A stretch of DNA of 64,000 nucleotides from Auanema rhodensis (Eukaryota > Animalia > Nematoda), in NCBI GenBank assembly GCA_964057225.1, contig OZ059895.1:17174001-17238000 (forward strand). The letters run 5' to 3'. A model generated the notes under the pieces. The model saw only the letters and a list, made by a program, of their open reading frames with translations. It made no database searches and was not told where the DNA came from. The stretch's first letter is position 1, and each line of letters starts with the position of its first letter. Made by a program: the position numbers and the translations under genes. This document shows positions 34,317-40,045 of the stretch, piece by piece.

Positions 34317-36825
34317 AACGATCACGATATTCATTCTTCAGATGTTACACTTATATCTGTACCAACAATAAAAATATATAACAATATCTCTAAAAACATC
34401 GGGATCAATCGGGAGCGATTGCAGAGAAAAAAGGGGCGCCAATAGATGTTAACAGACGGCCAAAAAAAACACTACAATCTCAGTGAAGTGGTTAATAAAG
34501 ATGGTCTTGAACCACAATTAAAGACAAAGGAGTTCGATGTCTAACGCTCTAAAGTTGTACTAGTCTCTAACACATTTTGAAGGAGGTAGTGGAAAAGAAA
34601 GGATGATAACAGGATCTACCTGTGTTCGTGACTGATTACATCGGTTTAACCGATATTAAAATAGAGAAAAGAAAAAGGCAGAAAATGCCTGAAGGGGATA
34701 GAACCCGTCTGGGACAACAGCGAGTGACACACCTGAAAAAGATGAGCACATCACTCTCTGAACCCGGGAAGTACCGTATGATGGGATTTGGCTAAATACT
34801 ATGTACATTAGGGTTCTAGTATAATCTGGAGAGTAGTATAAACAATATGTGAAAAAACTTAAGATTTTGCAATATTAGGTACCAGGCCTACTTAAATAAG
34901 ATATACCAAGTTTCCAATAACAAAAGATCACCATATAATATACATAGACCCAAGATGTGAATAGAAGTTAACACCATCAAGCCGGAATCACAAGAAAACA
35001 CTAGATTATAGCAGTAAAACAACACCGCGTTTTGTACCGTGTGCAGGATAGCCAGCCAGAATGAGCATGCATATATTAGAGCATTTAGAGCAACGAAATC
35101 GTCGAACAACGCCACTGTTAAGACAACTTGCGCGCTTTTCATATTAATTTACCATACAAAACAATGGAAAGAATTAACGAACAAGTTGTCCGTTCAGCTC
35201 ACAAATAAAAAAAACGTGTTGACTAGCGTATGTTGCTATCTATTAGCTATATACAGTCTGCACTGCTCAGAGCCTGAACTGGAAATGTACAAAAAGCTGG
35301 TGACCCGACTGGTTCACAGGAGAGAAATGGGGCGAAGTATTAAGAAAAAGAAATTAGAAACAGCTGAACAATCGCGCAGCAAAACAAAACTTCATAATTT
35401 CATAATTGTTCAACTGTCGGATAAAGGGTAGACAACGATAATCCATGAGTGGGGAGGGGTATGGATGAATTTACCCGATCAAAGGTAGGGTCGATATCAC
35501 ACCATTAGGTTAACGTTATAAAGCGGAGAAGTGAGAAAATGGTAGAACGACCCAACCAAATACAATGACTGTAAGACGTGAGGAAAATTAAAATGAATCC
35601 AGGAAACTAGAAATCTCTATCATTTTTCATCACAAATTCCCTGAGGACTCGGCAATGTTAATAACAGAGATAACAATAAGTGGTTAGACGATATATACAT
35701 ACATACAATTCTTGCTCAAAGTTTTAGACAAATCTTTTCTCACGAGAATTTAAGGAATAAAAATGCAACTTATCACCTAGATCTAAAATAAAAAAAATTT
35801 TTCATACACCCCCCAGGGAGGGAATAAAAATATTTTGGATTTCGCAATTGTTGCTTCACTCAGTTCTTTCGTTTTCAAAAAATGAATGAGAAAAACATTT
35901 GTATAAATTCGTGGGCCAGAACTGTATATACATGTTGGTTATATATATATAGTATACTTGGATATGGAAAATGCTTAAAACGATCAAGATAAAATTTCCA
36001 AGAATAAACTAACTTTTCCGAATACCGAACTTTTTCAGTAAATAAACTGTGAAAGTTTACATTCGAAGGAGGGATGTAGAGGAAAATGGAGACGTGTCAA
36101 AAGAAATTTTAAAAATTCGAGAGACCGATCCATCTGGATAGTGTACCGTTAAAAATATGTTAGGATTAGGCTTTGAGAAAGACACAAGAAAAATATGGGA
36201 TAAATTGAAGACAAAAAAGATGCAATACCATACTAAGCCTAAGCAATATAGTCTTTAGTTGAAACTTTAACGATAGCTTTAGTATATGTTATTCTTATGT
36301 CTTTCTTCAAGGTAATCACTAACATTTGGTATATTACTAGGTATTTTAATGTGGTATCTTCTGCTGGTATTTGAAATATATTTCTGAAAGGGAGTGGTTG
36401 AAGTTTTAAGTTATTAACGAAGCGAAAAAGGTACCATAGTACACACTCGGGATTAAGGGCCTTCTAAAGTCGGTATTCGGAAAGGTTAATAAAATGAGAA
36501 ATATCGTTCAAAAAATATCGGTTACTCCAAACATTTGATACTATCGTTCACCGACATTTTTGTTCAATATATTTGTCCAAGTACATTATATAGCTATAGA
36601 AAATCAAGAACATTAAATGATTACTACTTGCTATACTCCTGCTCTAGTCATTCTAAAATGAGCCTCAAAAATTTCTGATTTAGACCGTTCGAATAATGAG
36701 ATGAACATATTAGGAGATAGAGGTAGATATTACAGAAAAGAACCATTAAAATATAATTAGAAAAAGCTACGAGAAATAAGAAAAGCAATCGTACAGAAAT
36801 GCGATTTCAGTAGAAATTCACCGTC

Positions 36826-37327
36826 TTAAGAGGCACCAACCGTAACGGCTGCGATGAGTTGCATTGGATTAAGACGGATACCGTTCATTAAATGAGACTC
36901 GATAGAAGATTGGCTGCTGACACTTCCTGCTCTGTCTGTGGAAGAAACAGAATCAGCCATAGAACCGGTATCAGACTCGCTCCCAGAACCACAAAGCTAA
37001 AATGTAGATCTCAATGTACAGCCGTAACAATTCACTATTACCTCCGCAAACCAATCACTGGGTGGAAGAGGAATAGCGCGTGCAGATGGAGAATCACTGA
37101 ATTTACTTCCAGCGAAGCATGGATTGTTATTGGAGCTTTGTTTGCGCGTGTTAGTGGTACGACGTCCAGGAGTGCGACTCTTGGGGGTGTGAGGAATAGA
37201 AGCGATGCTCGAGCTTGAAGCAAAGGTGACTCTGAAAAAGATATATTCACCTATTGATAGAAGTTACAATAAATTACCTATTCTGAGATCGAGATGGCGA
37301 ATTAACAGATTGCGAATTGTACGACAT
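36826..37327 (-). CDS. PNRC-family (proline-rich nuclear receptor coactivator / decapping activator) protein, about 135-140 aa, 3 exons
   Basis: MSYNSQSVNSPSRSQNR|VTFASSSS...NPCFAGSKFSDSPSARAIPLPPSDWFAE|LCGSGSES...GIRLNPMQLIAAVTVGAS*. FAGSKFSDSPS..IPLPPSDW matches the PNRC motif [22 protein letters not shown]. Confidence 0.85.
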
Positions 37328-37418
37328 ACTAACAAAAGAAGAAATTTAAACACTTAAACAGATTCAACAATATTTGAAGTTGCTTATAAGCGCACAAGGT
37401 CGGCGAGCGGTGTGGCTA

Positions 37419-37528
37419 TCACCTGTAAAATATATATTAGATTAGGTTAAGGGAAAAAACAAGTACCTCAATAATATTCTTCTTTCAGTTACAGATCTTA
37501 TTATAACCGAGTTTGACTCAGTTAACAT
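37419..37528 (-). CDS. Upstream ORF (21 aa) in the PNRC-like leader, spliced across intron 37466-37423
   Basis: ATG TTA ACT GAG TCA AAC TCG GTT ATA ATA AGA TCT GTA ACT GAA AGA AGA ATA TTA TTG AG|G TGA TAG = MLTESNSVIIRSVTERRILLR followed by two stops. Confidence 0.6.
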
Positions 37529-40045
37529 AAAATATTCTCCGGATGTTTGGGAGAATGTAATCCTTTCCTTTACTGTCTTACGGATGGTACTTTCCACGAA
37601 AAAACTGGCACCGACTAATCGGCCTTAGATGGAATGGACGCAAAGTGCGATTTAGACTGAAAGTTTATACATATCAATTATATCAATTTATGAGAAAACG
37701 AGAGGAACGATAAAAAAAAAGTGAAACTATGACTACCAACCCTAAAAATATAGGGCATATTAAATTTCTTATAGCGGTATTTTTAAGCAAAACTGCAAAC
37801 TTTTTCTAAAGTTTTTAATTTCAATTTTCATCAATTGTAATTTAGCAACGATTTATGAAGCACATGAAAAAGGCAGTTTTGAAAAGGGATGGTCATATGC
37901 ATAAATCGAAGCCTCACAATCGATTAACTCAGGTCTGCATTGGATTGTCATGAGGGGTAGCCAACCGCGACGCATCACGCACGCGTCGCGGACAATCGAT
38001 AATATTTCAGCAGCGGGAAGTAAAGGACAAGCAGAGAAAAAGCGACGCAGACGCTCAGAAGGTTGTGGAAATACGATAGGAAGAGTGGAAGGTCGAGAAG
38101 AGCCAGAAGGCCCATATGTTATGAGAATCAGGATTGTGGAGAAAAGCAAAAATAAGAAGAACAAAGAAAAAGTAGAAACCTCGAGAAGCAAGAAAACTTT
38201 AACATACAGAAATCGAGGCAATAATTTCTTTATCATATATTAATGTCATACATGGAGCTAGGGTCAAATAGATGTGACTGATCGTTTTTATCGCGGAAGA
38301 AACTAGTCCTTATATGTCATTAAGCACGTAAAATCGACAAAAAATGGAACGAAAATGAAACGACCACATCCTAAAGATGTTGTTGGCACAGCTGAGAAAT
38401 AGGTGGGTAGGGAAGGGGGTTGGCGAGGAAGAAGAATGACTCTTTTACAAGCAAACTAGTATTTACAATGTGTCTGTTTCGCAATGGTCATATTGCCATG
38501 TTGAACATCAAGCTTGTTAATTACATATACGATATGTTTACAAGTAGAGATCATCATAACCTTTTCCTAATTATATAATCTAGAAAATATGAACAATCGT
38601 AAAAGTTGTCGGATAAACTGATTACTTTATCTATACGAATTATTTCTATGCTGGGTTCAACGAAGAAATCTCGTAAAAAGTATGAATTCCAAAAGGAAAA
38701 CCGAAAAAAAGAAACCTGGACAAAAAAGACGTCGTGGAAAACGAGAGTAAGTAGCGAGAGTCCGATGGTTCATTTGCTACGAATGGGCTAAAGTGCAAGT
38801 AATGATTGAAGGATGGGGGGAGGGGCAGTGCCTGCTCCTATTCGTTTTTAGGCATGCAAACAATAACAAAAGGGCAAAGAATATTCTTCCTAGATTTTAT
38901 TTGAAAAGACTGTTGTCAAAAGAGCGAGGAAAATGCATCAATAGATTTATTTTTATTTGAAATCTATCCTCAGTTGTATTTTTCACAATAAGCAAGGAAC
39001 CGGCTTAAATAGGCAATAAGCATTTATTTACAGCTCCAGAGAACCTTCTGAAGATCTAGAATTTTCTTCCATTCTCTTGTTTTTGATTTAAAAAAACAAT
39101 CAATGTTCGTGAAAAAGAAATTGACAGAAAAATAAAAAGATGAAGGAGTGATAATGGAACCGACCGTTTGCGAGCGCATCAGAGCTGAAAATGAAAATAC
39201 ACTCACTCATCATAGAAAAGATGAAAAACAAATGGTGTAACGGTCACCAAAACTACTTGTTAAAACGATCAAAGTATTGACGTTCAAATGATATAACTAT
39301 AATTTATATTTGTATTTAACTTTATGCTGTAAGTGTATTGTTTAAAAAAGTAAAAAAGAACAAGACGATGTCTAAAAAATGATATTGCGAAATATAGGTA
39401 GAGAATGGCATAATGTCAAATCACAATTCGTGATAAGCAATCTGGAACGTCTATTTTGCTCTTATCCCCGAACAACTTAGCAAACAGAGTAGAAATCAAA
39501 TGTATCAGCGTTTTCTTATTAATCTTAGTAATCATTGATCAATTGATGTTTCATATCTTAACTGTCAGGTAAAGATGACATCTATCGAATCAAAAAAACA
39601 AAAAAAAAATATTTGAGTGAACGCAACCGGTCTATGCCGCCAAAAATTAGAATGAATCATGAAGAAAATGAAAGTCGGCATTCAGTAATTATAAAATTAT
39701 AATTGCGATTTTTGATTAGAATATTGTTGATGGGAACATCGTAATTTAATGAAAAGCCACGATGATTCAAAATATATTTCGTAACACGTTCATAATCTTA
39801 CATAAAATCGATCGAAACATTTTTATTCAAACAAAATCTCCAAATTCTGTCAAACAATCAAGTGTACTAACATGACACAACAACGAAAGATAAAAACTTT
39901 CCTCCAAAAAATATAACAACCTGATCAAAATGAAACAGACGTGACTTAACTAAAGCACACAGAGCTAAAACAAGGTAAGACACTCCAATGAATTGCACTA
40001 TAAGTATAGCACCCAGCGTTCTTCACTTAAATGCCTTTGAATAAA

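What the first reader, a model, noticed from the sequence alone, without database searches (positions are those of the whole stretch)
37325..37657. Spliced peptide uORF in the leader of a nematode PNRC-family decapping activator, with an acceptor that could bypass it
Seen: a leader exon starting at TTTCAG (37657) holds the uORF MLTESNSVIIRSVTERRILLR* (37528-37419). It crosses a 44-nt intron and ends in tandem stops TGA TAG, and its frame stays open about 30 codons upstream of the ATG, so a non-AUG extension is possible. A second acceptor TTTTGTTAG (37329) sits 1 nt before the main ATG. Known: PNRC2 bridges UPF1 and DCP1 in decapping/NMD, and vertebrate PNRC2 carries a conserved peptide uORF. 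From memory (unverified) that peptide contains LTELTSVIIRSVTE, nearly identical to LTESNSVIIRSVTE here. Inference: an ancient sequence-dependent uORF controlling a decapping activator, switchable in nematodes by alternative trans-splicing (distal site keeps the uORF, proximal site removes it).
Basis: partly seen in the sequence, partly recalled or inferred. Interest (0 to 1): 0.9.

Follow-up and report, generated by a model that had tools for sequence, protein, structure and literature searches.

The report
Conserved peptide uORF before nematode PNRC
A 21-codon upstream reading frame in the leader of a worm PNRC (decapping-activator) gene is real; its last seven amino acids and its UGA stop are kept in several rhabditid and hookworm relatives, which suggests a peptide-dependent brake on translation, but nothing found here shows it is shared with vertebrates or switched off by trans-splicing.

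Summary
On the minus strand, an acceptor (TTTCAG, 37662-37657) opens a leader. Its only upstream AUG (37528) starts MLTESNSVIIRSVTERRILLR, which crosses a 44-nt GT-AG intron (37466-37423) and stops at TGA TAG. The main ORF (ATG 37327, 136 aa) carries the PNRC motif.

The uORF recurs upstream of PNRC orthologues in Auanema sp. JU1783, Ancylostoma caninum and two unidentified nematodes known from cDNA-like contigs. One of those contigs starts with the SL1 3' end. The last seven codons (ERRIL[L/I/V]R) give pN/pS 0.14 with saturated synonymous change; the 13 codons before them give 0.88. UGA is invariant, and the AUG context is weak in all five.

The uORF is absent from Caenorhabditis briggsae, Diploscapter, Toxocara and three other nematode transcript groups. 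Pristionchus has no AUG form. It is therefore lineage-restricted, not demonstrably ancient.

Human PNRC2 has a published conserved-peptide uORF, but its sequence could not be obtained. The recalled match falls on the part that varies even within Auanema.

No data support trans-splicing at 37329. That acceptor would instead fuse the uORF in frame to the main ORF.

Most likely this is a cis-acting nascent-peptide (termination-stalling) uORF tuning PNRC output.

The parts
37657..37662 (-). TTTCAG 3' splice acceptor at the start of the leader; probable SL1 trans-splice site
   Evidence: Sequence. Identity to Auanema sp. JU1783 rises from 44-45% upstream of it to 78% downstream. The orthologous cDNA contig L004 starts with GTTTGAG, the SL1 3' end, 139 nt before its uORF AUG; the distance here is 128 nt.
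37467..37656 (-). Leader exon 1: 128 nt of 5' leader, then the first 62 nt of the uORF
   Evidence: It is 78% identical to JU1783, as conserved as the coding exons.
37534..37556 (-). Inverted repeat ATTCTCC-N9-GGAGAAT, a possible 7-bp hairpin ending 5 nt before the uORF AUG
   Evidence: Both arms (TTCTCC/GGAGAA, loop 9-10 nt) are present in all five species. Free energy is -6 to -11 kcal/mol, with z-scores of only -1.1 to -2.2. One outer pair changes A-U to G-C; otherwise there is no covariation. The structure is not proven.
37419..37528 (-). uORF: ATG 37528, 20 codons plus AG in exon 1, the final G plus TGA after the intron; peptide MLTESNSVIIRSVTERRILLR
   Evidence: Orthologous uORFs. The last 7 codons have pN/pS 0.14 and the preceding 13 have 0.88.
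37423..37466 (-). 44-nt GT-AG leader intron inside the last uORF codon
   Evidence: Canonical GTACTT...TTTTACAG. JU1783 has a similar GT-AG intron at the same place. Removing it gives AGGTGATA, which is contiguous in cDNA contigs L004 and L005. Identity to JU1783 is 64%, against 73-78% for the flanking leader.
37328..37422 (-). Leader exon 2: the final G of the last uORF codon, the TGA TAG stops and a 91-nt spacer to the main AUG
   Evidence: It is 73% identical to JU1783, including a perfectly conserved 20-nt block (TCTGTTTAAGTGTTTAAATT).
37329..37337 (-). TTTTGTTAG acceptor-like site 1 nt before the main ATG
   Evidence: Sequence. JU1783 has TTTGTTAAG here. No transcript evidence for its use. 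Joined to the uORF donor (after 37467) it gives ...ILL-S-MSYNS in frame with the main ORF, read directly from the sequence in both Auanema species.
36826..37327 (-). Main ORF, 136 aa, a PNRC-family protein: exons 37327-37278, 37231-37042 and 36996-36826
   Evidence: Spliced translation. Pfam PNRC 24.4 bits, cut-off 21. 83% identical over exon 2 to the Auanema sp. JU1783 protein P0001. A profile of the nematode orthologues hits human PNRC2 peptides in Dcp1/Dcp2 complexes (5KQ1, 4B6H) and, weakly, yeast Edc1.

Best explanation
This is a genuine conserved-peptide uORF (CPuORF). It is restricted to part of the rhabditine nematodes: Auanema, hookworm-type strongylids and two unidentified relatives. 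It sits in the SL1-spliced leader of the PNRC/Edc1-type decapping-activator gene.

Proposed mechanism (inferred):
1. Scanning ribosomes meet a single upstream AUG in a weak context, so some initiate there and the rest leak past to the main AUG.
2. Ribosomes that translate the uORF make a peptide whose only constrained part is the C-terminal ERRIL[L/I/V]R, directly followed by an invariant UGA.
3. That nascent peptide slows or blocks termination or ribosome release at the UGA. This limits reinitiation 53-91 nt downstream and obstructs following scanners. Early termination probably also exposes the mRNA to nonsense-mediated decay.
4. The output of a decapping/NMD cofactor would thereby be tied to translation or decay status.

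Shown: the anatomy, the conservation and its peptide-level signature, and retention of the uORF in SL1-bearing and other cDNA-like contigs. Inferred: translation of the uORF, stalling, and feedback through NMD.
For: - Five orthologous uORFs end in ERRIL[L/I/V]R-TGA: window, JU1783 (L002), L004, L005/L006 and A. caninum (L001).
- The invariant residues use different codons across species: GAA/GAG, AGA/CGA, AGA/AGG, ATA/ATT/ATC, TTA/CTT/CTC. Summed Nei-Gojobori values for the last 7 codons are pS 0.77 and pN 0.10 (ratio 0.14), against 0.88 for the preceding 13 codons. The other two frames are not conserved.
- A nucleotide profile finds the core only in these leaders.
- cDNA-like contigs show the uORF separate from, and upstream of, the main ORF. 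L004 begins with the SL1 3' end.
- It is the only uAUG in the window, JU1783 and L004 leaders. In the window, 3.9-4.2 ATGs would be expected by chance (P about 0.05).
- The -3 position is U and +4 is not G in all five species.
- The leader is as conserved as the coding exons between the two Auanema species, and conservation starts at the TTTCAG acceptor.
- Many NMD-factor mRNAs carry uORFs or long 3' UTRs as feedback features (PMC3783168). Mouse Pnrc2 is translationally controlled through uORFs (PMC5892948).
Against: - There are no Ribo-seq, RNA-seq or reporter data for any of these species, so translation and stalling are inferred only.
- Only five sequences from about four lineages are available, and two are of unknown species.
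- The invariant AGG|TGA overlaps a splice junction in Auanema and a donor-like GTGAGA in A. caninum, so some of the invariance could be a splicing constraint.
- The whole leader is conserved between the two Auanema species, so that pair alone does not single out the peptide.
- The human PNRC2 CPuORF, a possibly unrelated peptide, showed no significant frameshift effect in HEK293T reporters.
- Several nematode lineages do without the uORF.
Confidence: 0.55

Rival explanations
1. The uORF acts independently of its peptide, or the conserved element is RNA. It is either a plain leaky-scanning/reinitiation gate, or the conserved block is RNA signal: the splice donor with exonic enhancers, the TTCTCC/GGAGAA hairpin, or a protein-binding site. 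Under this reading the peptide motif is incidental.
For: The non-coding leader around the uORF is equally conserved between the two Auanema species, at 73-78%. The GGAGAA and TTCTCC blocks and AGGTGATA are conserved as nucleotides, with spacing to the AUG that is not frame-preserving. The last sense codon spans a splice junction.
Against: Within ERRIL the codons differ at synonymous sites in nearly every species while the amino acids do not (pS 0.77, pN 0.10). The other frames are not conserved. An RNA element would keep bases, not residues. The hairpin is weak (z -1.1 to -2.2) with almost no covariation.
Confidence: 0.2
2. The short ORF is protein-coding in its own right. It either makes a trans-acting micropeptide, or it is an alternative N-terminal exon: the donor after 37467 joined to the acceptor at 37329 gives MLTESNSVIIRSVTERRILL-S-MSYNS..., in frame with PNRC.
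For: The in-frame relation holds in the window and in JU1783, read directly. After removal of the 44-nt intron, the junction recreates a donor-like AG|GTGATA. Gene predictors fused the uORF to the main ORF in A. caninum (P0006), and the A. cantonensis model (P0008) begins with a similar N-terminus.
Against: cDNA-like contigs L004 and L005 show the stop retained, and in L004 the uORF is in a different frame from the main ORF. The invariant UGA right after the motif argues for termination there. Only seven residues are constrained, which is little for a free peptide. The two Auanema species are too close to count as independent. The A. caninum model spans an assembly gap.
Confidence: 0.1
3. One reading: an ancient uORF peptide homologous to the vertebrate (and insect) PNRC2 uORF, bypassed in nematodes by alternative SL trans-splicing at 37329.
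For: Human PNRC2 has a CPuORF (PMC7530721), and mouse Pnrc2 has translated, stress-responsive uORFs, so the same gene family carries uORFs in two phyla. An acceptor-like TTTTGTTAG lies 1 nt before the main ATG. In another nematode group SL1 is added 72 nt before the ATG with no uORF (L015).
Against: No uORF of this family occurs in C. briggsae, Diploscapter, Toxocara or three more transcript groups, and Pristionchus has no AUG form. The residues said to match vertebrates are the unconstrained ones. Mouse uORFs are described as long and partly CUG-initiated, unlike this 21-codon AUG uORF. No printed vertebrate sequence could be found. The acceptor is AAG in JU1783. The cDNA contig L003 carries at least 44 nt of non-SL leader before its ATG.
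Confidence: 0.08

Closest known systems
Human PNRC2 conserved-peptide uORF (ESUCA screen, Takahashi et al. 2020, PMC7530721) and the translated mouse Pnrc2 uORFs (Paolini et al. 2018, PMC5892948)
   Same: The host gene family is the same (PNRC motif). In both cases a uORF with a conserved peptide lies in the 5' leader, and the main ORF is poorly translated or regulated.
   Different: The mouse uORFs are described as two long ORFs with CUG and AUG starts, whereas this is one 21-23-codon AUG uORF. The human uORF gave no significant frameshift effect. The nematode uORF is missing from most sampled nematode lineages, so independent origin is the simpler reading.
Termination-stalling uORF peptides (from general knowledge: cytomegalovirus UL4 uORF2, mammalian AMD1 MAGDIS, fungal arginine attenuator peptide, plant CPuORFs with conserved C-termini)
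   Same: Short uORF; the constraint is concentrated on the C-terminal residues that abut the stop codon; the stop codon is invariant; the AUG context is weak and leaky.
   Different: The ERRIL[L/I/V]R motif resembles none of these. No stalling or ligand dependence has been shown. The last codon spans an exon junction.
Autoregulatory NMD circuit, in which mRNAs of NMD factors carry uORFs or long 3' UTRs (PMC3783168)
   Same: A uORF sits on the mRNA of a factor linked to UPF1-dependent decay and decapping. Its termination lies upstream of two exon junctions in the coding region.
   Different: Those uORFs are not reported to be peptide-conserved. A role for nematode PNRC in NMD has not been shown. 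PNRC2 itself is not named among the circuit's targets in that paper.

Membership tests
Conserved-peptide uORF (CPuORF) | AUG-initiated ORF lying wholly upstream of the main ORF in the mature mRNA | tested here: met
   cDNA-like contigs L004 (with SL1 remnant) and L005/L006 carry the uORF, its stop, and 53-55 nt of spacer before the main AUG. In the window this is inferred from the canonical 44-nt intron.
Conserved-peptide uORF (CPuORF) | Present upstream of orthologous main ORFs in several lineages | tested here: met
   Found in the window, Auanema sp. JU1783, A. caninum and two unidentified nematodes. The main ORFs are mutual PNRC orthologues.
Conserved-peptide uORF (CPuORF) | Purifying selection on the amino acids (Ka/Ks clearly below 0.5) | tested here: met
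   The last 7 codons have pN/pS 0.14 with pS 0.77. The N-terminal 13 codons give 0.88, so the constraint is confined to the C-terminus.
Conserved-peptide uORF (CPuORF) | The uORF is translated | not testable with these tools
   No ribosome-profiling data are accessible for these species.
Homology group of the vertebrate PNRC2 CPuORF | Peptide similarity to the human, chicken or zebrafish PNRC2 uORF | not testable with these tools
   The supplementary alignments of PMC7530721 are not held. Five other papers' supplements gave nothing. No vertebrate DNA is reachable with the tools.
Homology group of the vertebrate PNRC2 CPuORF | Continuity across intermediate lineages, as expected of an ancient element | tested here: not met
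   Absent from 4-10 kb upstream, or from the transcript leaders, of PNRC orthologues in C. briggsae, Diploscapter pachys, Toxocara canis, Pristionchus fissidentatus (no AUG form) and three other transcript groups.
PNRC / Edc1-type decapping activator (main ORF) | PNRC motif: YAG-x-x-F activation motif followed by a proline-rich Dcp1-binding segment | tested here: met
   Pfam PF15365 scores 24.4 bits against a cut-off of 21. The orthologue profile aligns CYAGSKFSDSPSARAIPLPP..W with the PNRC2 peptide of 5KQ1/4B6H (E 2e-5) and weakly with Edc1.
PNRC / Edc1-type decapping activator (main ORF) | Binds DCP1/DCP2 (and UPF1) and stimulates decapping | not testable with these tools
   A biochemical property, inferred only from conservation of the motif.
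Termination-arrest uORF peptide | Conserved C-terminal residues directly followed by a conserved stop codon | tested here: met
   ERRIL[L/I/V]R-TGA in all five species.
Termination-arrest uORF peptide | Sequence-dependent repression (lost on frameshift) and a ribosome paused at the stop | not testable with these tools
   Needs reporters, toeprinting or Ribo-seq.
Alternative trans-splicing switch (distal site keeps the uORF, proximal site removes it) | Spliced leader found at both acceptors | tested here: inconclusive
   Distal: an SL1 3' end on orthologue L004 at the equivalent position, and conservation starts at 37657. Proximal: no transcript evidence. The site reads AAG in JU1783, and L003 carries 44 nt of non-SL leader. 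There are no reads for the window's own species.

The most novel reading that the evidence does not exclude
ERRIL[L/I/V]R-UGA is a new animal ribosome-arrest peptide that senses termination, NMD or decapping capacity and sets the dose of a decapping activator by feedback. It is either the nematode counterpart of the vertebrate PNRC2 uORF (deep homology) or an independent reinvention of peptide-uORF control on the same gene.
Probability: 0.15. Interest if true: 0.8.

Novelty: new member of a known kind. Interest (0 to 1): 0.5.

Why it matters
Few animal uORFs have a defined, short peptide motif under clear amino-acid selection, and validated arrest peptides in animals are rare. This one offers a seven-residue motif plus an invariant UGA that can be tested directly by frameshift, recoding and toeprinting.

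It sits on the mRNA of a decapping/NMD cofactor whose vertebrate counterpart is also uORF-controlled. That points to dosage control of decapping activators at the level of translation, possibly evolved twice.

It also occurs in hookworm-type parasites but not in Caenorhabditis, which would explain why it has not been noticed in the model worm. At least one public gene model (A. caninum ANCCAN_19936) wrongly starts at the uORF AUG.

Tried and rejected
- Word-indexed protein search with the extended 60-aa uORF frame: no candidates.
- JGI metagenome scan with the PNRC profile: returned only the contig already held.
- Literature searches for the peptide strings (SVIIRS, ERRIL and similar): only unrelated words matched.
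- Supplements of Takahashi 2020, Mackowiak 2015, Sandmann 2023, the 2026 Nature microprotein paper, Crowe 2006 and Hayden & Bosco 2008: no PNRC2 uORF sequence. Paolini 2018 gives only mouse coordinates.
- The profile search for PNRC homologues returned nematodes only, so no vertebrate or insect locus could be fetched.
- Non-AUG N-terminal extension: rejected. JU1783 has an in-frame stop, and the conserved GGAGAA block is 5 nt from the AUG in L005 but 6 nt in the others.
- 'Tandem stops' as a feature: rejected, because the second codon is a stop only in the window.
- Hairpin as a proven structure: not supported by RNAalifold (-0.74 kcal/mol, no compensatory pairs) or by shuffles.
- Rfam: no family matches 36500-38400.
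- Pristionchus 'KERRIK|GT' leader exon: it has no AUG, is purine-rich and has no stop after splicing. Left as unexplained.
- Earlier scan notes: nothing relevant.
Full report
**What is in the window**

All features lie on the minus strand.
- TTTCAG ends at 37657.
- A leader of 329 genomic nt then runs to the main ATG at 37327.
- The leader holds a single ATG, at 37528. Dinucleotide shuffles of the leader predict about 4 (P about 0.05). The 644 nt further upstream hold 14.
- From that ATG the frame reads MLTESNSVIIRSVTERRILL, then AG, then a canonical 44-nt intron (GT at 37466, AG at 37423), then G TGA TAG.
- The spliced peptide is therefore MLTESNSVIIRSVTERRILLR, with the stop at 37421-37419.
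- Unspliced, the ORF would run seven more codons.
- The frame is open for 32 codons upstream of the ATG.
- TTTTGTTAG ends at 37329, one base before the main ATG.

**The host gene**

Three coding exons (37327-37278, 37231-37042, 36996-36826) give a 136-aa protein.
- Exon 2 matches Pfam PNRC above its gathering score: 24.4 bits against 21.
- The closest database protein is an unnamed protein of Auanema sp. JU1783, 83% identical over exon 2. The window is most likely from an Auanema-like rhabditid.
- A profile of nine nematode orthologues hits the human PNRC2 peptides crystallised with Dcp1/Dcp2 (5KQ1, 4B6H; E about 2e-5). It also hits yeast Edc1 peptides more weakly, through the YAG-x-x-F and proline-rich motif.
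- Orthologues occur across nematodes: strongylids, filariae, ascarids, Pristionchus, Caenorhabditis, Panagrolaimus and Ditylenchus.

**The uORF is conserved in some relatives**

One representative protein, A. caninum ANCCAN_19936, begins MTSECNSVSRTTLTERRILIR. That gene model starts at the uORF AUG.

Fetching the loci shows four further orthologous uORFs, giving five with the window:

| Source | uORF peptide |
|---|---|
| Window | MLTESNSVIIRSVTERRILLR |
| Auanema sp. JU1783 (L002) | MLIGFTSVTVRSVVERRILLR |
| cDNA-like Logan contig L004 | MNTECSVQRSRSVIERRILIR |
| Soil metatranscriptome contigs L005/L006 | MNSQFIAVSSKERSEIERRILVR |
| A. caninum (L001) | MTSECNSVSRTTLTERRILIR |

- All five end in AGG TGA.
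- JU1783 has a similar GT-AG intron at the same position. The spliced Auanema junction AGGTGATA is contiguous in L004 and L005, which supports the intron.
- L004 begins with GTTTGAG, the 3' end of SL1, 139 nt before its uORF AUG. The window has 128 nt from TTTCAG to its AUG. A mature trans-spliced mRNA therefore keeps the uORF.
- Other contigs in the set also start with SL1 remnants (L009, L010, L015), so the assemblies do preserve them.

**Where the selection acts**

Between the window and JU1783:

| Region | Identity |
|---|---|
| Upstream of TTTCAG | 44-45% |
| Leader | 73-78% |
| Leader intron | 64% |
| Introns within the CDS | 47-48% |
| Coding exons | 76-92% |

The exon boundary at 37657 is therefore real, and the whole leader is constrained.

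Across the five species the invariant residues E-R-R-I-L use two to three different codons each. Nei-Gojobori sums are:
- Last seven codons: pS 0.77, pN 0.10, ratio 0.14. All replacements fall at the L/I/V position.
- Preceding thirteen codons: ratio 0.88.

The other two reading frames of the block are not conserved. This is a peptide-level signature confined to the C-terminus that abuts an invariant UGA.

The AUG context is weak in all five, with U at -3 and no G at +4.

An inverted repeat, TTCTCC-N9-10-GGAGAA, ends 5-6 nt before the AUG in all five. In A. caninum it is split by a putative 58-nt intron. It is thermodynamically weak and shows almost no covariation. I list it as a conserved sequence feature, not a proven hairpin.

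**Where it is absent**

tBLASTn, motif scans and an nhmmer profile of the 107-nt core find nothing in the following:
- C. briggsae, 4 kb upstream. A uAUG-free stretch of about 140 nt follows the nearest acceptor-like site.
- Diploscapter pachys.
- Toxocara canis.
- Tylenchid-like SL1-bearing transcripts, which hold only MQKA plus tandem stops.
- A panagrolaimid-like transcript group.
- A further group in which SL1 is added 72 nt before the ATG.

Pristionchus fissidentatus has a conserved leader exon ending ...KERRIK|GT, but without an AUG and without a stop after splicing. I leave this unexplained.

The element is therefore lineage-restricted within the rhabditines. It either arose after the Caenorhabditis/Diploscapter lineage split off or was lost there.

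**The vertebrate link**

- Human PNRC2 does carry a CPuORF identified by ESUCA. It was one of 17 tested by frameshift in HEK293T cells and is not among the eight that responded.
- That screen used fly, zebrafish, chicken and human, not nematodes.
- Mouse Pnrc2 has two long translated uORFs (CUG and AUG starts listed). Its ribosome density rises on eIF2 phosphorylation.
- I could not obtain any vertebrate or insect PNRC leader or uORF peptide.
The congener JU1783 shares only 8 of those 14 residues. Near-identity with vertebrates is therefore implausible. If anything is shared, it should be ERRILxR-stop.

**The proximal acceptor**

- No transcript evidence supports trans-splicing at 37329.
- The site reads AAG in JU1783.
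- The cDNA contig L003 carries 44 nt of non-SL leader before its ATG.
- Joining the uORF donor (after 37467) to this acceptor gives AG+T = Ser followed by ATG, which is in frame. An N-terminally extended PNRC isoform is therefore an alternative use of the site in both Auanema species.
- The retained stop in L004/L005, and the different frame in L004, argue that the separate uORF is the main form.

**Mechanism and verdict**

The best-supported reading is a cis-acting CPuORF. Leaky initiation occurs at a weak AUG. The nascent ERRIL[L/I/V]R peptide acts at UGA termination to limit reinitiation 53-91 nt downstream. It probably also sensitises the mRNA to NMD, which would give feedback on a decapping/NMD cofactor. 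NMD-factor mRNAs commonly carry such features (PMC3783168).

The anatomy and conservation are shown. Translation, stalling and feedback are inferred.

It is a new member of a known kind (CPuORFs). It parallels the vertebrate PNRC2 uORFs, but homology to them has not been shown.

Noticed in passing
L001:6001-6066 (Ancylostoma caninum JOJR01000809.1): Public gene model ANCCAN_19936 (RCN34223.1, P0006) starts at the uORF AUG and fuses MTSECNSVSRTTLTERRILIR to the PNRC ORF through odd exons. An assembly gap (Ns at L001:7711-7905) probably hides the true first coding exon, so this looks like a mis-annotation.
   Followed up: partly
P0008 (Angiostrongylus cantonensis A0A0K0DD34): The 233-aa model begins MNFSECSRSV, which resembles the N-termini of the uORFs in L004 and A. 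caninum. This hints that metastrongyles carry the uORF too. No DNA could be fetched.
   Followed up: no
L016:7347-7465 (Pristionchus fissidentatus): A leader exon about 550 nt upstream of the PNRC ATG has an AUG-less open frame, ...TSLCALRGQG...KERRIK, ending at a GT donor. A Pristionchus-like model (P0039) reads ...TSVCALRGQG...EERIRRIS fused to the main ORF. Whether this is related to ERRILxR is unclear.
   Followed up: partly
L009:1-313 and L010:1-267: SL1-bearing transcripts of a tylenchid-like PNRC orthologue (348 aa) have a 4-codon uORF, MQKA, followed by tandem stops TGA TAG, 71 nt before the main AUG. It is a different, minimal uORF on the same gene family.
   Followed up: no
L015:1-84, and the JGI contig without DNA: In another nematode group SL1 (CCCAAGTTTGAG) is added 72 nt before the PNRC ATG with no uORF. 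A second contig of the same protein has a leader of at least 227 nt, which may be an alternative or an unprocessed leader.
   Followed up: no
window:37966-37990 (minus strand): A GC-rich inverted repeat, CGCGACGC-N9-GCGTCGCG, lies in AT-rich sequence about 310 nt upstream of the leader acceptor. It may be a promoter element. The region is not alignable with JU1783 (45% identity).
   Followed up: no
window:37341-37360 (minus strand): A 20-nt block, TCTGTTTAAGTGTTTAAATT, between the uORF stop and the main ATG is identical in Auanema sp. JU1783. It stands out from the 73% identity around it.
   Followed up: no
L017:9350-9450 versus 9960-10060 (Toxocara canis JPKZ01001383.1): The first coding exon of the PNRC orthologue and its short leader are duplicated about 610 nt apart. 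This is a local duplication or an assembly artefact, and the upstream copy was called as a separate 58-aa gene.
   Followed up: no
P0010, P0018, P0029, P0033, P0037 (filarial PNRC orthologues): The filarial proteins carry long N-terminal arrays of an 8-residue repeat (MHPxSSGI-like) that are absent from other nematode PNRC proteins.
   Followed up: no
P0005, P0015 (ENA metagenome proteins of 1224 and 1413 aa): P0005 matched the window's PNRC exon in four separate stretches; P0015 is a 1413-aa member of its cluster. Origin unknown.
   Followed up: no
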